A stretch of 63,598 nt of DNA, filler included, from Ministeria vibrans ATCC 50519 (taxonomy: Eukaryota > Protista > Filasterea), in NCBI GenBank assembly GCA_943704425.1. It is 5 parts of 5 records of this genome, joined end to end, with 100 filler letters (N's around TTAATTAATTAA, not from the genome) between each part and the next. Parts side by side here need not be neighbours in the genome. Positions count along the whole stretch, not along the records: positions 45,621 to 53,178 come from CALSCP010002459.1; 4 more parts are not named here. One strand, given 5' to 3'. The notes beneath the pieces were generated by a model. That model had not been told where the DNA came from. It saw only the letters and a program-made list of their open reading frames with translations, and ran no database searches. The position numbers and the translations under genes were made by a program. Below, one piece after another: positions 45,621 through 53,178 of the stretch (positions are counted from its first letter, which is position 1; every line of letters starts with the position of its first letter).

Positions 45621-45805
45621 TTTTTTTTGCCAAAAAAACTCAAACGAAAGAATCAAAGTGATAAAAAAAAAAAGAGAAAAAAAAAGAACACATTCCGCTA
45701 CGCTGTGCCTGTCGCACCGTGCCTCTAACTTTGGAAAAGAGAGTCATCCGCACCGTCCACGACGTGCGCTGTTCAGCGCGTCTCCCAATCCGTTGAGACA
45801 TTCTC

Positions 45806-45837
<32 letters not shown>

Positions 45838-45867
45838 CTCTCACTCTCTGCACCTTCTTCTCAACAG

Positions 45868-46490
45868 AGGGCGCCAATGACATTATCGACGAGACGCTCC
45901 GCTTCTTCAAGGGTGCGAAACGAGCTGCGTCGTCTTCTCTCTGTGGCTCATCCCATTGTGTGTGTGTGTGTGTCTCTCTTTGTTTTTTCCTTAGCCAACG
46001 TTTTCTTCCGCAACTACGAAGTCAAGGGCAACGCCGACCGTCTCCTTGTCTACATGACTCTCTACACAACACAGTGCCTCGAAAAGCTGCAGAAGTGCTC
46101 TTCCAAAAACGACGTAAGAGCCCACAAATGGACAGCACACTCCTTCTTGTCTCTTGACGCTGCCTTGTTGTGCAGGGCTTGAAAGCACTCAACTCGCTTG
46201 CCATGGAGAGCTTTGCACTTCCCGGCGAAGGCCGTTTCCAGCTCAACGCACTCTACACCGCCCCCAAAGACCGTTCCGAGAGCGACCAGATGCGTCAGTA
46301 CCTTCTCCAATGCCGTCAGGAACTTGGCGTGCGCATCTGCGAGCTTGTCTTCAAGAATGGCGACAAGCCCGACAAGGTGCGACACAACACTCGCCAATAC
46401 CCTCATTCTCCTCACACTTCTTTCTTTCTTTTTTCTCTGTAGTGGTGGATGTGCTTTGTGAGGCGCAAGTTTCTTAACAAGTCTCTCTGA
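45868..46490 (+). CDS. ARPC3: Arp2/3 complex subunit 3 (p21-Arc); 5' exons missing
   Basis: [35 protein letters not shown]...FALPGE..F.LNALY..P...[15 protein letters not shown]...[18 protein letters not shown]. Confidence 0.96.
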
Positions 46491-46826
46491 GTTCGACCGT
46501 CCTCTTCTCCTTTTCCTTCTCTTCAACCCTTCTTTTTTTCTTTTTTTAATACACTATTGACAGCCTCTTGATTGAGCCAACGTGTTTATCTCTCGCTAGT
46601 CCCTGTTGGAGTCTCGACCGCTGCGTCCTGTATCTGTGGCTGAGCTGCATTCTCACTTGACTTGACATTGCCATTTAATCCCATTTATCCTTCACCACAA
46701 GTGATACCATAAGTAATCAGGATTCAGGAGTAAGGAATCATCTCTCAATGAACTCATTGATAAAGTCAATTCTGTAACCTTTAAATAACCTTTCGTCTTC
46801 ACTCTTTACTCATCAATCATTTTCCC

Positions 46827-49800
46827 ATGTTGCCCATCGTGATCGCCCTTCTCTTTGCCCTTGGGCTCGGGGGCGACCCAGTGGCAGGCGCTGTCCTGTT
46901 CAGCGACGACTTCGACCTGGCAGTGGGTCTCGTCTCCTCCAAATGGGATTTGACGACAACCGCCTTCATCGACGACCAACGATGCACTTCAATGGAACAT
47001 TTCCTCGTCATGTTCGACGATGCGACCACGCGCCAACTCAAGACGGTCTCCCTGGACCTCACCAATGCAGTCATTCTCTCCTTCTTCTTCTCGAGCGGCG
47101 TGGGAACCTGTAAGAGCGACACACACACACACACACACAACACAGCCATTCTCAATCATTCGCTTTTTCCTCAGCTTGCAACGAACCACAGGCGTCGCAG
47201 GCCGTAAGCGTCGGCTACGTGGGGGCCAGCCTTCCTGTCGACATGGACTTGATGTTTGGGCGGCACTCGGCGCTCGAGAAGCGGCTGCTGTTGCCGGTGG
47301 GAGCGCAAGGCAACGCCACGACACTGTACTGGGAGCAGAACACCTTCTCGACGACGCTCGACAACTGGGGCATCGACATGGTGCGCGTCATCGCCATCGA
47401 CAGCCAAGGTCCACCTGTGACCATGACCGACACTTTTTCGAGCGCAACACCCGACAAATGGACCTACCAGATTGGAGGGCAGCTGCAAGCGGCCTTTTGC
47501 CAGCGTCTCAACGTGCTCCTCTTCAGCACCCTTTTCAACACAGAGGCGACCTTTCGTTTTGCCGAAACCCAACTACTGGATCTATCGTCGCAGACCAATG
47601 CCACTGTGCAGTTTGTTCTCACCGTCGGCTGTGGCGTCGACGACGACTTCGCAGCCGTCGAGTTGCAGTACCGCACACTCTCGGGCGACATCTGGACCAG
47701 CGTCCACAGCGACACCTGCTACGAGTCATCGTCTGTGGACTTGCCCGCCTGCACCGTTTTTCACCCCGAGACCATCTACCGTGCGGACGATTTCCCGACT
47801 TTTCGTCGTGTCACCGTCACCAGCCTGCCTTCCACCAACGAGACGGTCGCCTTCCGTCTGCGGCAGCTCGCCGGCCTTCCCGTCACCAACTGGGCGCTGG
47901 CGCACTTCTACGTCGGCTCCAACTGCTCCGACATCACGTGCTCCTTCCGCGGCATTTGTTCCGACGGTATCTGTGAGTGCGACTCTGGCTACACCGGCGA
48001 CACCTGTTCCATCATCACCACCCCTCTGCCCACGTCGCTTTACGACGACTTCGAGTCCGTAGCGGTGTCTTTTGCCCTCTACGCCGCCAGCAGCGCCGTT
48101 ACCTTTGCGTCGACCTCGTGTGGCGTTGCCTCGCAAGGCAATGGTGCCGTATTCCTGGGTGCTGGCCGGCGCTTTCTCGAGACCCACGACCTCAATGTCA
48201 CTGACGCCCAGGTCATCTCCTTCTTTGTCGCGACGGGCATTCAGAGCGGATGCGACGTCAGCGAAGGCGGCAGCGAGGCCCTTCGCATCGCTTTTTCGAC
48301 TAACGCCGGCTCCACCTGGACACGCTTCTACACTGCCCCCTCCGCCTCTGTCACCCAGGTCATCGCGTCCATTCCCGACGCCGCTCGCAGTGCTCCCCTC
48401 GGCGCACGCTTCCGTATCTGGCAACCCGTGGCGGACGGGTCTTTGTTCGACGGCTGGGTCCTCGACGACCTTTTTATTGGCGGCCTCTCCACCGTGCCTA
48501 CCTACCTGCTTGATGCTCTTGATGGCGTCAGCGCCCCCAGTACCGCCTGGCTGTACCCCGCCATCAATGGCATCCACAACACCACTTGCACCGAATCTGC
48601 AACACAGTCGCTTGTCTTTGACACCGACTCGCCCTTTCAGCTCGCCTCCACGCACACTCTCCACCTCTCACCTGCCGCCTTTGCCCAATTCGACCTGGTC
48701 ATTAACTGCGCCGGTGCCGTCACCGCCTCCGCCTACGACGTGCTCCTCGAGTACCAGGTGGGCAGCCCCGACAGCGAGTGGAAGGTTGTCGTCGACGAGC
48801 CCACCTGCCAGTTCTCCTCTTCCCTCTACGACGAGCCTAGCTGCGACACTTTCACCCGCTCAACCCTCTACTCGTCACGCGAGTACACCTCGTGGCGTCG
48901 CATCACCGTGCCCACACTCAACGTGCCCAATGGCGGCCAAGACATGCGTCTGCGCTTCATTGTCCAGTCTCAAGTCACTGGCGGACGCTGGTCCATCAAG
49001 AATGTGTACATTGGTGACGGCTGCAACGGCACCTTCTGCTCGGGCCATGGCTACTGTCGCCACACTGCCTGTGAGTGTGACACGGGATTCACCGGAGACC
49101 ACTGTGAGCTGTTCACGGGCACGAACGAGCGCGAGCTCCTTGCTGACTCGTTTCTCACGGACCCCGCCTCCCTCCTGGGCTTCGACTACCTTTCGCTCTC
49201 CGCCATTGCGGGCCTTTCGACTGCCTGCCAGGCCAACGGTGTCGGCAATGGCATGCTCTTTCACGGCTTTGGACCGCGTATCTTTGAGACGGTCGACCTG
49301 AACCTTGTAGGCTCCAGTGTGGACTACGTGCCGTTGATCTCGTTCCTGGCGGGTACATCGACGACTAACGGATGCGACCGCGCAGAGGACGTTGGCGAGG
49401 GCATCTACGTGGCGTACTCGACCAACGGCGGCGTACACTGGCATCGTTTCTACGACGACTCGTCCGACCCGCTCGGTGTCCCCTCAGGCGACGGCACCTA
49501 CGAGATCCTTCGAATCGTGCCTGACGTTGCGCGCACCGAAAACACTCGCATTTTGCTGTGGCAACCATCGTTCTCGGGGCCCAACAATGACAACTGGCTC
49601 ATAGACAATTTGTATTTGGGTGGTCGTCCACTGGTCACCGCCATCAATGCCGACACGAAAATTTCCGAAGCGTTCATGTGGAGCGGTCTGGGCGCAACGT
49701 CTGGTACGTTCTGCGGACGCGACTTCTCCTTGAGCTTTGCCGGCAAGGACACTGCCAACACACTCACGACCCACCCGCTTGCACTCGGCCGCATGACGAA

Positions 49801-52800
49801 CCCTGTGCTCTCCTTTGAGCTTAACATTGGCTGTGGCGTCGAAGACCTCGCAGTCCGCATTTCCGTCACCTATCAACTTCCCAATGCTGTACGACAATGG
49901 TGAAAAGGAGGGAGAGAATTAATACTGACGTTATAATGGGCTTCGACCCTCTATTAAATTTTAGACCGGTTGGAAACTTGTCCAGTCACAAGATTGTTTT
50001 TCATCGAACATTGGCGTTCTACAATGCGACTCTGCCTTCCAATTCCAATCACTCTATGCGTATCGTGATGCCTACGCCTGGCGTCGCTTCTACATTGTTG
50101 ATCTTCCGGCCGAGATGCGCGTGGATGGTGTCCAGATTCGCATTGGTCAGGTTGACGCGACGGGCACATCAAGTTCGTCGTGGGGTGTGCGCGAGGTGAT
50201 TCTTGTGGACGGCTGTAACAACCACTGCAATGGCCATGGGAGTTGCATGAGTGCTGGTGTGTGTGCTTGCGATACGGGCTTTACTGGCGCCGACTGTGCC
50301 GAAGTGAGCTCGCCATTGGCCACTGAGATTCGCGATGAGTTTGAAGACGACCTGGTCTCGCCTGTGCACTACGAGTACCATTCGGGGGTTGAGGTGTCCA
50401 CGAGCGCGTGCGAGACAGTCGTCAGTGGTGACCGTCTTGTCTTTACGCGTGGCTACACTCGCTACTTGATGACACGCGAGCTCAATCTTACTCACGCCGA
50501 TTTGATCACCATGTACACCTTCACTGGCTCGGGCGTCTTGTGTGAGACCGTTGACAATATTGCGACTGAGGAGCTCTCCTTTGCGTACTCTGTTGACGGT
50601 GGCGTGCGCTGGACAACGCTGCCACAGCCGAACACTCGCTTTGTGTCGTCGCCCGGTGAGAGCACCATCCACTTGCCTGGTGGCGCCAAACAAGTTGCGG
50701 TGCGTATTCTCATTTGGCAGGCGGCGCTTTCGTCGTTTACGGGTGATGTGATGGCTGTCGATTCGCTCTTCATTGGTGGCATCTCAGCCAACCTGACAAC
50801 CATGACCGACTCGTTTGCACCGTACAACGTTGATCAATGGATCTGGCCAGGCATTGGAACCACCGGTACCTTCTGTGGCAAGCCCGATGCACTTATGTTT
50901 CTGGGCAACGACGGAGAGTCGGTGCTTGCCACCAAGGCCATGAATCTCGCGGGACGCCTCGAGACTGTCGTTCAGTTTGAAATTAATGTGGACTGTCTCA
51001 TTGCCACGAGCGGCTTTTCCGTTGCCCTGCAGTACCTGGACATCACTGGTACCTGGCTCTATCTTGTTGTCTCCAGCTGTGCCTTTGCGAATCCCAACGA
51101 CAACGACTGCTCCAACTTTTCGCTGTCGACTGAGTACACCTCGTACGAGTTTGGTTCCTGGCGACGCGTCACCGTCACCAACTTGCCTTCAGCCGCCTTG
51201 TACGACCAGGTGCGCTTTCGATGGGTTGTCCCCGGCGGTGGCTCCACGTCGACCTCGTGGGCCGTGCGCAATGTGTATATTGGCTCGGGCTGCGGCGCCG
51301 CAGGTTGCTCGGGACACGGTACTTGTTCGTTTGACCTGTGCACATGTGACACGGGCTTTACGGGTGCCCAGTGTGACGCGATGCTTGTAGGCATCCTGCC
51401 CACCTCTGTGCGCTCCACTTTTAACAGCAGCTCGTCGCCGTTGCCCTTGCAGTGGCCTGTGGTCTCGGCCGTGTCACACGGCACCAAGTGTAGCGAGGCC
51501 AGCGACGGCACGGGTGCGCTTTTTTCCGGTGCAGGACGTCGCTATTTGATCAGCGCCGATCTCAATCTTACTTCGGCGCGTCTGCCTCTCGTGTCCTTTT
51601 TCTTTAGCGGCGGCTCGCCCTGCGACCCCTCCGAGAGCTTGGAAGAGACTGCGCATGTGGCGTACTCCACCGACGGCGGCAACAACTGGGTGCGACTTGG
51701 ATGGACCCCACTCAGATTGTCGAGTCCCGAGTTCGCAGCGTTTTTTCTGCCTTTGTCGGTGACACAGGCGCAAGCTTTGCGTGTCATGTTGTTCCAGCCG
51801 ATGCAGTCGTCCAATACGGCCGACGAATGGCTTGTGGACGACGTTTTCATTGGTGACGGGGAGGCTGTCTCGCCCTACGCTGATTTGGCGACCCGTTCCG
51901 TCTACGCGGGCAGCGACGCCTTTGACGACAGCCTTTTGCTGTACGCGTTGCAAGCGGAGCAGGTGTTTCCTCAGACGAGTGTGGAGGGTCAGCTGTGCGG
52001 CTACAGCGGCGCCGAAGCGGCGCTGGTGTTTGGCCGCGCTCGCGGCGACTATGGTCTGCGCATGGCCCAGACGCGCGTCTTCAACCTTACTGGTGCCTCG
52101 GTCGATGATGCCACGGTGCAATTTGAACTGGCGCTCAGTTGTGATCAGTTTGTGTCGTCGTCTATCAGCATCGAATTGGAGTACACGACTGTGTTAGATC
52201 CGCACACTGGGGACTGGCTTCCCGTCCACGAGACCTACTGCCACACATGTAATACCTTTGGGTCGTTGCGCACCTCGTACACCTCCAATGATTACTATCT
52301 GGCGACATTTCATCGCTACTCAGTCCCTCTCACGTCCGCCATGCTCGTTCCCTCTGGCGTCTCCTTTCGCTGGCGTCTCGAAAATGGTGCCTCCCGCACT
52401 GAATTTGCTCTCAAGTCGCTCTACGTTGGTGCCGACTGCCCTCTCCGCTGCTTTGGTCACGGAAGATGTATGCCAGGGGGTACATGCGCGTGCGATTCGG
52501 GCTACTCGGGTCTCAGCTGCGAGACAGCAGCCACTAACCAGGGTGCGCCCGTCCACATTGACCTCACTGTGTCTACTTCGTCGCGTCCTCTCGTCGAGCG
52601 TCACTCCGATGCTCTTGTTGTCAGCTCCTGTGGCGGCCCTTTCTCTATGATGACCTTTCAGCACAATTCGCGTTTTATTGAGACAGTTGATTTTAATGGT
52701 AACGGACAAAAAGTTTGTGTTTAAAATAATAATAGTAATAATTATTATTACTATTATTATTATCATTATTATTTAGTTCCCAGCTTTGGCACAGTCCTTC

Positions 52801-52947
52801 GTATTTCGATTCTGATGGGAGGACAGTGCGAGATTCCAGACAGTGGCGAAGATGTGTATGTGCTGTTTAGTGTGGATGCGGGGTCTTCGTGGAAGCCGCT
52901 GGGGAGTATCAACAGTGCAAACACCAATTCTGTGGGGATCCACAATG
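46827..52947 (+). CDS. Secreted reelin-repeat protein (at least 5 reelin repeats); 3' end lost at contig edge
   Basis: Signal peptide MLPIVIALLFALGLGG. Repeating subrepeat-A / EGF / subrepeat-B units with Asp-boxes (FSTNAGSTW, YSTNGGVHW, YSVDGGVRW, YSTDGGNNW, FSVDAGSSW), WRRITV, RI..WQP, W.(L/I)D..(F/Y)IGG, and CSGHG.C...C.CD.G(F/Y)TG..C EGFs. Exons at 47176-49888 and 49965-52712 splice in frame. Confidence 0.88.
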
Positions 52948-53070
52948 TAAGAGAATGAGAAAGAGGGAGAAAGGAGGGAGAAGAAAAAGGAAAAAAACAA
53001 AGTGATAGAGAGAAAGAAGCAAAGTGATAGAGTGATAGAGAAAAATGGATAGAAAGAAAGTGTGTGTGTT

Positions 53071-53177
<107 letters not shown>

Positions 53178-53178
53178 G

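What the first reader, a model, noticed from the sequence alone, without database searches (positions are those of the whole stretch)
46827..52947. Reelin-repeat protein in an apparently unicellular holozoan
Seen: signal peptide, one partial N-terminal subrepeat, then five EGF-centred units each flanked by A and B subrepeats with Asp-box and W..D..IGG motifs. No N-terminal Reeler domain is present, and the gene runs off the contig. Known: this repeat architecture is characteristic of reelin, regarded as an animal extracellular signalling protein. Inference: if the host is non-metazoan, reelin repeats predate animals. The subrepeats have carbohydrate-binding-like jelly-roll folds, suggesting an ancestral adhesion or glycan-binding role.
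Basis: partly seen in the sequence, partly recalled or inferred. Interest (0 to 1): 0.8.

Follow-up and report, generated by a model that had tools for sequence, protein, structure and literature searches.

The report
Reelin-repeat protein gene, host unidentified
This short contig carries a real gene for a secreted protein built from at least five reelin-type repeats, but it is not the animal brain protein reelin, and since such repeats already sit in public choanoflagellate and bacterial sequences it extends a known family.

Summary
Observation confirmed. On the + strand of 46827-52946 lies a spliced eukaryotic gene. It has 4 exons and GT-AG introns of 65-78 nt. The 5' end is complete and the 3' end is cut by the contig end.

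It encodes a signal peptide, one degenerate B-type subrepeat, then five A-EGF-B reelin repeats, the fifth incomplete.
- Pfam Reelin_subrepeat-B: 1.5e-70 and 3.8e-62.
- Mouse reelin R5-R6: E 3e-71, collinear over 736 residues.
- An AlphaFold model of one unit matches reelin crystal structures at TM 0.74-0.79.
- No Reeler domain.

It is not an orthologue of bilaterian reelin. Bilaterian reelins show clean one-to-one R1-R8 repeat orthology, and this protein shows none. In a quick tree its repeats form their own clade with a EukProt protein that is probably choanoflagellate.

The host could not be identified. Nothing above about 50% identity exists among 1.84 billion representatives. The neighbouring ARPC3 fragment is 55-62% identical to animal and amoebozoan ARPC3. 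A bilaterian host is unlikely; a unicellular holozoan is plausible but unproven.

The idea that reelin repeats predate animals holds without this contig. Salpingoeca infusionum has a 3549-aa protein with 12 subrepeats. Bacteroidota secreted proteins carry the subrepeat too. I found no paper that says so. Verdict: a new member of a known kind, of moderate interest.

The parts
45868..46490 (+). Neighbouring gene: the 3' part of ARPC3 (Arp2/3 complex subunit 3, p21-Arc). Exons end at 45912, then 45995-46113, 46176-46376 and 46443-46487, with the stop at 46488-46490. The 5' exons lie beyond the left end of the contig.
   Evidence: Frames and GT-AG junctions read. Exon 3 matches human and bovine ARPC3 at E 7e-14. 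Exon 2 retrieves PF04062 proteins.
46827..47109 (+). Exon 1: start codon, signal peptide, and the N-terminal half of a degenerate B-type subrepeat (B0). Ends in phase 1.
   Evidence: Pfam PF21471 model positions 6-49, E 0.0044, below the gathering score.
47110..47174 (+). Intron 1, 65 nt, GT..AG, containing a (CA)n run.
47175..49888 (+). Exon 2: the rest of B0, repeat 1 (A1-EGF1-B1), repeat 2 (A2-EGF2-B2), and the first half of A3. EGF1 is at 47924-48007 and EGF2 at 49022-49105.
   Evidence: Pfam PF21471 at 1.5e-70 with 4 stretches, plus EGF_Teneurin and EGF_2. PDB reelin R5-R6 at E 3e-71. EGF cysteine pattern.
49889..49964 (+). Intron 2, 76 nt, phase 0, lying inside subrepeat A3.
   Evidence: The two A3 pieces (96 + 83 aa) add up to one subrepeat length.
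49965..52698 (+). Exon 3: the second half of A3, EGF3-B3, repeat 4 (A4-EGF4-B4), A5-EGF5 and the start of B5. EGF3 is at 50214-50297, EGF4 at 51291-51374 and EGF5 at 52437-52520.
   Evidence: Pfam PF21471 at 3.8e-62 with 4 stretches and EGF_Teneurin at 2.4e-19 with 3 stretches. A model of repeat 4 (50724-51869) matches reelin structures at TM 0.74-0.79.
52699..52776 (+). Intron 3, 78 nt, GC 15%, containing an (ATT)n repeat. Phase 1.
52777..52946 (+). Exon 4: the middle of subrepeat B5, with an Asp-box variant.
   Evidence: Pfam PF21471 model positions 39-85, E 0.0024. Sequence read.
52947..53178 (+). Start of intron 4 (GTAAGA donor). It runs into a 22-nt tandem repeat, then (GT)n and (GA)n, up to the contig end. 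The rest of the gene is missing.
   Evidence: All three frames are closed by stops.

Best explanation
A real, expressed-looking eukaryotic gene for a large secreted or cell-surface glycoprotein. Its body is a tandem array of reelin repeats. Each repeat is a compact unit in which two eleven-strand-type jelly-roll subrepeats (A and B) clasp a small EGF module.

Shown:
- the gene structure;
- the signal peptide;
- the domain order B0-(A-EGF-B)x5, with the fifth B incomplete;
- homology and fold match to reelin repeats;
- absence of a Reeler domain;
- absence of repeat-by-repeat orthology to bilaterian reelin.

It therefore belongs to the wider and older family of reelin-repeat proteins. That family also occurs in choanoflagellates, a sponge and uncultured marine eukaryotes. 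It is not the reelin orthologue.

Inferred function: the array forms a stiff extracellular rod. The jelly-roll modules are relatives of carbohydrate-binding modules, and bacteria use them on secreted surface proteins and proteases. Here they would bind glycans or protein ligands for adhesion or capture at the cell surface, not for ApoER2/VLDLR-type signalling.

Inferred host: a non-bilaterian eukaryote absent from current protein collections, most likely a protist related to animals.
For: Gene model and motifs.

Family: Pfam PF21471 at 1.5e-70 and 3.8e-62, with teneurin/tenascin-type EGFs. Mouse reelin R5-R6 at E 3e-71, collinear over two repeats.

Fold: the AlphaFold2 model of repeat 4 has pLDDT 76 and pTM 0.80. 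Foldseek gives TMq 0.79 at rmsd 3.3 A to 3a7q and TM 0.74-0.77 to reelin R8 (7lyu). The next matches are CBM22 and CBM51 carbohydrate-binding modules.

Not an orthologue: the control, Callorhinchus against Tachypleus, gives a perfect R1-R8 diagonal for both A and B subrepeats. Our subrepeats give no diagonal against four bilaterian reelins. In a tree of EGF+B units our four repeats form a clade with repeat 7 of P0008 (SH-aLRT 95). They lie outside all eight bilaterian repeat clades, each supported at 91-100.

Wider family:
- S. infusionum EP00049_P002869 has 12 PF21471 stretches.
- P0008 has 17 stretches plus SRCR, pentaxin and SH2.
- Tara Oceans contigs carry long-exon reelin-repeat genes.
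- Bacteroidota T9SS protein P0026 has 12 stretches at 985 bits, and thermolysin-type protease P0063 has 3.

Unsampled host: of 343 hits, none exceeds 35% identity over a long stretch; only a few short pieces reach 40-49%.
Against: - The function is inferred from fold and context only. No ligand, expression or localisation data exist.
- The 3' end is missing, so a membrane anchor, a cytoplasmic domain or further repeats cannot be excluded.
- The tree is a quick search with SH-aLRT support only. The split between bilaterian and other repeats is weakly supported (47).
- Sponge repeats fall on both sides of that split, so an early-branching or fast-evolving animal host is not excluded.
- The ARPC3 evidence is weak: 136 residues, best identity to a chelicerate, and no unicellular holozoan ARPC3 could be retrieved for comparison.
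Confidence: 0.72

Rival explanations
1. It is the true reelin orthologue of a poorly sampled or fast-evolving animal, such as a non-bilaterian or a parasite with a compact genome. Divergence would have erased the repeat-by-repeat signal.
For: The regular A-EGF-B architecture at a period of about 360 residues is exactly that of reelin. The top-scoring relatives are bilaterian reelins. The best ARPC3 identity is to a horseshoe crab. A sponge has reelin repeats as well.
Against: - No Reeler domain, and no room for one.
- No R1-R8 diagonal, although that signal survives between a chimaera and a horseshoe crab.
- The repeats cluster with each other and with a EukProt protein, outside all eight bilaterian clades.
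- ARPC3 reaches only 55-62% identity to animals and lacks the C-terminal SGPG tail that the animal sequences retrieved here carry.
- Exons of 2.7 kb with 65-78 nt introns and exon GC near 60% differ from the many-exon reelin genes of vertebrates. That comparison rests on my own knowledge.
Confidence: 0.15
2. The contig is a contaminant in the assembly it was taken from, or the gene was acquired by horizontal transfer. In either case it would say nothing about the nominal host.
For: The contig is only 7.5 kb and is bounded by microsatellites. The subrepeat domain also occurs in bacteria.
Against: The reelin-repeat gene and the housekeeping ARPC3 gene share a strand, the same intron style (62-82 nt, GT-AG) and similar exon GC, so the gene is native to whichever eukaryote owns this contig. 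A bacterial origin of the gene as it stands is excluded by its introns, its EGF modules and its eukaryotic signal peptide.
Confidence: 0.1
3. It is a decaying pseudogene or an assembly chimera, not a working gene.
For: The gene is truncated. The N-terminal subrepeat B0 is degenerate: it has no Asp-box and its second half gives no Pfam hit.
Against: There are 1967 codons without a stop across four exons, with consistent splice phases that restore whole subrepeats. All EGF cysteines and the subrepeat end motifs are conserved. GC3 of 0.65-0.76 in the long exons contrasts with 0.15-0.46 total GC in the introns.
Confidence: 0.03

Closest known systems
Bilaterian reelin (RELN), e.g. mouse reelin structures 2ddu, 2e26, 3a7q, 7lyu. 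Eight-repeat reelin-like proteins of Callorhinchus, Ptychodera, Tachypleus and Tubulanus.
   Same: The same repeat unit: subrepeat A, EGF, subrepeat B, with Asp-box motifs and a period of about 360 residues. About 30% identity. Secreted. The predicted fold of one unit superposes on the crystal structures at TM 0.74-0.79.
   Different: No Reeler domain and no reelin-specific N-terminal region. It starts with a lone degenerate B subrepeat. Its repeats have no one-to-one counterparts among R1-R8 and branch outside those eight clades. The C-terminal region is unknown. The gene has very few introns.
Choanoflagellate and uncultured-eukaryote reelin-repeat proteins: Salpingoeca infusionum EP00049_P002869 (P0010), EukProt P0008, Tara Oceans P0155/P0011, P0014 and P0161.
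   Same: Non-bilaterian-type reelin repeats at the same period. They fall in the same half of the repeat tree. P0008 repeat 7 is the nearest outside relative, with SH-aLRT 95. The environmental genes also have exons of several kb.
   Different: Only about 30% identical. S. infusionum has few EGFs for its 12 subrepeats. P0008 adds SRCR, pentaxin and a C-terminal SH2 domain. Our protein is the most regular A-EGF-B array of the group, as far as it is preserved.
Bacterial proteins with Reelin_subrepeat-B domains: Bacteroidota T9SS-sorted protein MBX3100897.1 (P0026) and a thermolysin-type metalloprotease (P0063).
   Same: The same jelly-roll subrepeat domain with Asp-box, in tandem arrays on secreted proteins. 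PF21471 scores 985 and 240 bits.
   Different: No EGF modules, so no composite A-EGF-B unit. Prokaryotic secretion signals (Por_Secre_tail). Combined with PKD, CUB and protease domains.
Carbohydrate-binding modules CBM22 and CBM51.
   Same: A single subrepeat shares the beta-jelly-roll fold. These are the first non-reelin Foldseek hits.
   Different: No detectable sequence similarity. TM is only about 0.28 over the whole unit. No sugar-binding residues were tested.

Membership tests
Reelin-repeat proteins (Pfam PF21471 Reelin_subrepeat-B with an intervening EGF) | Subrepeat domains matching the family profile above the curated threshold | tested here: met
   235 and 208 bits against a cut-off of 27, four stretches in each long exon.
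Reelin-repeat proteins (Pfam PF21471 Reelin_subrepeat-B with an intervening EGF) | Composite unit of subrepeat A, EGF and subrepeat B, repeated in tandem | tested here: met
   Five EGF modules at a 359-382 residue spacing, each flanked by subrepeats. Collinear alignment to two mouse repeats.
Reelin-repeat proteins (Pfam PF21471 Reelin_subrepeat-B with an intervening EGF) | Compact fold with two jelly rolls in contact and the EGF at the side | tested here: met
   The AlphaFold2 model of repeat 4 has pTM 0.80. TMq is 0.79 at rmsd 3.3 A to 3a7q, and TM is 0.74-0.77 to 7lyu over the whole unit. This is a prediction from an 11-row alignment, not an experiment.
Reelin proper (RELN orthologue) | N-terminal Reeler domain after the signal peptide | tested here: not met
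   No Reeler hit in any exon. The start codon lies 336 nt after the stop of the upstream gene.
Reelin proper (RELN orthologue) | Eight repeats, each orthologous to the same-numbered repeat of other reelins | tested here: not met
   The bilaterian control gives a perfect diagonal and ours gives none. Our repeats lie outside the eight repeat clades. The repeat number is unknown beyond five because the gene is cut.
Reelin proper (RELN orthologue) | Conserved basic C-terminal region | not testable with these tools
   The 3' end of the gene lies beyond the contig end.
Reelin proper (RELN orthologue) | Receptor-binding lysines of repeat 6 that dock into ApoER2/VLDLR LA1 (known from 3a7q and 5b4x) | not tested
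   Without repeat orthology there is no defined equivalent of repeat 6. The residue mapping was not attempted.
   No RNA marker on the piece. The ARPC3 fragment is 62% identical to Tachypleus, about 55% to mammals and 57% to Planoprotostelium. No near-identical protein or DNA was found anywhere.

The most novel reading that the evidence does not exclude
The contig comes from a unicellular relative of animals that no public protein collection has sampled. Its gene would show that the complete, regular reelin-repeat array (A-EGF-B in tandem on a secreted protein) was already assembled before animals arose, as a cell-surface binding or adhesion rod. Bilaterians would later have fused it to a Reeler domain and fixed it at eight repeats to make reelin.
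Probability: 0.45. Interest if true: 0.6.

Novelty: new member of a known kind. Interest (0 to 1): 0.45.

Why it matters
The papers I could search still treat reelin as a vertebrate, or at most bilaterian, invention (PMC3308698; PMC12867693). I found none that mentions reelin repeats in relatives of animals.

This gene changes that picture when set beside the choanoflagellate, sponge, marine-plankton and bacterial sequences found here.
- The subrepeat is an old extracellular binding module.
- The A-EGF-B unit very likely predates animals.
- Eight-repeat reelin with fixed repeat identities goes back at least to the bilaterian ancestor.

That gives a concrete path for how a neuronal guidance protein was assembled from older parts. 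It also offers simpler organisms in which the original role of the repeat can be tested.

The limits are plain. The key sequences are already public, the host of this contig is unknown, and the gene is incomplete.

Tried and rejected
Searches that gave nothing:
- Word-index protein search with exon 2: no hit. The length window and word filter probably explain this, so I then used the exhaustive HMMER search.
- Exact look-ups of ORF 50115-52721 and of P0046: not on record.
- An exact 35-mer from exon 2: absent from genome contigs and metagenome contigs.
- Rfam on the piece: nothing.
- Protein Atlas: only a generic reelin cluster, with no useful taxonomy.
- The 2015 reelin evolution paper (PMC4687978) is not held.

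Taxonomy through ARPC3:
- The region-limited search with exon 2 gave 8 hits at 62-77% identity.
- Their contigs are marine metagenome contigs without a reelin neighbour. The full-length hits group with arthropod ARPC3 in the profile search.
- That profile search listed almost only bilaterians, so no unicellular holozoan sequence was available for comparison.

Ideas considered and rejected:
- Minus-strand ORFs of 189-312 aa overlapping the gene have no family match. I take them for by-products of GC-rich coding sequence.
- A bacterial origin of the gene as it stands is excluded by its introns and EGF modules.
- P0126, one of the hits with higher identity, proved bacterial: it carries a Por_Secre_tail.

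The spliced protein was never searched or folded as one joined sequence. Exons were handled apart, by reference.

Full report
**The piece and its genes.** The piece is 45621-53178, 7.5 kb. It holds two genes on the + strand and ends on both sides in low-complexity DNA.

At the left is the 3' part of an ARPC3 gene. Its exons end at 45912, then run 45995-46113, 46176-46376 and 46443-46487, with the stop at 46488-46490. I identified it by eye and by matches to human and bovine ARPC3 (E 7e-14) and to PF04062 proteins.

After 336 nt of AT-richer spacer, the gene of the finding starts at ATG 46827.

**Gene model.**

| Exon | Coordinates |
|---|---|
| E1 | 46827-47109 |
| E2 | 47175-49888 |
| E3 | 49965-52698 |
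| E4 | 52777-52946 |

- The introns are 65, 76 and 78 nt, all GT..AG, with GC of 0.46, 0.38 and 0.15. The exons have GC of 0.51-0.61.
- GC3 is 0.65-0.76 in the two long exons.
- The splice phases restore whole domains. The two halves of subrepeat A3 (96 + 83 residues) add up to one subrepeat. E1 and E4 match complementary parts of the B-subrepeat profile, positions 6-49 and 39-85.
- There are 1967 codons without a stop.
- After E4 a GTAAGA donor opens an intron that runs through a 22-nt repeat, (GT)n and (GA)n to the contig end. All three frames are closed there, so the gene is cut.

The spliced product was never handed to any tool as one joined sequence. All searches were made exon by exon, by reference.

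**What it encodes.** A hydrophobic leader is followed by a degenerate B-type subrepeat and then five units of subrepeat A, EGF and subrepeat B. The fifth B is incomplete.

- The EGF cysteine pattern occurs five times at a period of 359-382 residues.
- Pfam gives Reelin_subrepeat-B at 1.5e-70 and 3.8e-62, against a cut-off of 27 bits. It also finds teneurin/tenascin-type EGF.
- Against solved structures, exon 2 aligns collinearly over 736 residues with mouse reelin repeats 5-6 at E 3e-71.
- I modelled repeat 4 from an 11-row alignment of our own repeats and repeats from two environmental loci. The model has pLDDT 76 and pTM 0.80.
- Foldseek places that model on reelin R5-R6 (TMq 0.79, rmsd 3.3 A) and on reelin R8 (TM 0.74-0.77). 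The next matches are the carbohydrate-binding modules CBM22 and CBM51.

**It is not reelin itself.** The exhaustive HMMER search of 1.84 billion representatives returned 343 hits. The best are eight-repeat reelin-like proteins of a hemichordate, a horseshoe crab, a chimaera and a nemertean, all at about 30% identity.

I cut these and our protein into A and B subrepeats and scored all pairs.
- Chimaera against horseshoe crab gives a perfect diagonal: every repeat is best matched by the same-numbered repeat, for both A and B.
- Our subrepeats give no diagonal against any of the four. Their scores are in the range of the off-diagonal cells.
- Our repeats are also as distant from each other as from any foreign repeat.

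In a maximum-likelihood tree of 57 EGF+B units (quick search, SH-aLRT), the bilaterian repeats fall into eight orthologue clades with support of 91-100. Our four complete units form a clade of their own together with repeat 7 of a EukProt protein, P0008 (support 95). That clade sits in the half of the tree that also holds Salpingoeca infusionum and the environmental proteins. The deepest split itself is weak, at 47, and the sponge Sycon has repeats on both sides of it.

**The wider family.**
- P0010 is EP00049_Salpingoeca_infusionum_P002869, a choanoflagellate protein of 3549 residues with 12 subrepeat matches.
- P0008 is a EukProt entry that carries the same TransDecoder-style name, so I infer it is another choanoflagellate. 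It has 17 subrepeat matches plus SRCR, pentaxin, EGF and a C-terminal SH2 domain.
- In both, several EGFs are spaced about 360-390 residues apart.
- Tara Oceans and other metagenome contigs carry reelin-repeat genes with exons of up to 4.9 kb followed by further reelin-repeat ORFs, a gene structure like ours.
- A 288-kb contig carries a 4090-residue ORF of subrepeats.
- The subrepeat alone is strongly present in bacteria. A Bacteroidota T9SS-sorted protein has 12 copies (985 bits) and a thermolysin-type protease has three.

**Host.** This is the weak point.
- No rRNA or tRNA lies on the piece.
- No protein above about 50% identity exists in the collection.
- The word search, the exact look-ups and the exact DNA scans were all blank.
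- Over 136 residues, the ARPC3 fragment is 62% identical to Tachypleus, 55-60% to other bilaterians and 57% to the amoebozoan Planoprotostelium. It ends at ...NKSL without the SGPG tail of the animal sequences retrieved.
- No ARPC3 of a unicellular holozoan could be retrieved, because the listing was filled by bilaterians.

Together with the repeat tree, this argues against a bilaterian host. It fits a protist related to animals. It does not exclude an early-branching animal or another amorphean.

**Mechanism.**
- Shown: a secreted protein with a tandem array of compact reelin repeats.
- Inferred: a stiff extracellular rod whose jelly-roll modules bind glycans or protein ligands for adhesion or capture. 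This rests on the CBM-like fold and on the bacterial use of the same module on secreted surface proteins and proteases.
- Reelin-type signalling through LDL-receptor relatives is not implied. The Reeler domain is absent and no equivalent of repeat 6 can be defined.

**Literature.** Searches for reelin together with choanoflagellates, Capsaspora, holozoa and related terms found no paper that reports reelin repeats outside animals.
- Hynes 2012 lists reelin among later-evolving matrix proteins (PMC3308698).
- A 2026 paper states that reelin was long thought to exist only in vertebrates. It cites a 2015 analysis that places its origin with arthropods (PMC12867693).
- That 2015 paper is not held.

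**Verdict.** The gene is a new and well-preserved member of a family whose pre-animal age can already be read from public sequences, although it seems not to have been written up. Interest is moderate. It would rise if the host proves to be a unicellular relative of animals and the full gene is recovered.

Noticed in passing
window 45868-46490: Partial ARPC3 gene with three short introns (82, 62 and 66 nt) in its last 136 codons. The protein ends at ...NKSL, as in the amoebozoan sequences retrieved, without the SGPG tail seen in the animal ARPC3 sequences.
   Followed up: partly
window 45802-45849, 47117-47143, 52741-52773, 52990-53174: Microsatellites sit in introns and at both contig ends: (TC)n, (CA)n, (ATT)n, a 22-nt repeat, (GT)n and (GA)n. 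They probably explain why the assembly broke here.
   Followed up: no
P0001-P0004 (Ptychodera, Tachypleus, Callorhinchus, Tubulanus): Eight-repeat reelin-like proteins of a chelicerate and a nemertean show clean one-to-one repeat orthology with a chimaera and a hemichordate. Eight-repeat reelin therefore dates at least to the bilaterian ancestor, earlier than much of the literature states.
   Followed up: partly
P0008 (EukProt, 4693 aa): Seventeen reelin subrepeats are combined with SRCR, pentaxin and EGF modules and a C-terminal SH2 domain. This looks like a receptor that links reelin repeats to phosphotyrosine signalling. The source species is not shown.
   Followed up: partly
P0026 (MBX3100897.1) and P0063; L011:3-1619: Bacteroidota T9SS-sorted proteins and a thermolysin-type metalloprotease carry 3-12 strong Reelin_subrepeat-B domains. 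The subrepeat is thus not specific to eukaryotes. The direction of any transfer is unknown.
   Followed up: partly
L006:706-7479, L010:115-9204, L009:8001-25689: Marine metagenome contigs (Tara Oceans and others) hold reelin-repeat genes with exons of several kb, separated by short gaps. These belong to uncultured eukaryotes whose repeats group with Salpingoeca infusionum.
   Followed up: partly
P0013 / P0158 (Sycon ciliatum): A sponge protein of up to 5793 residues joins reelin repeats to a long run of Notch-like EGF modules. Its repeats fall both inside and outside the bilaterian repeat clades.
   Followed up: no
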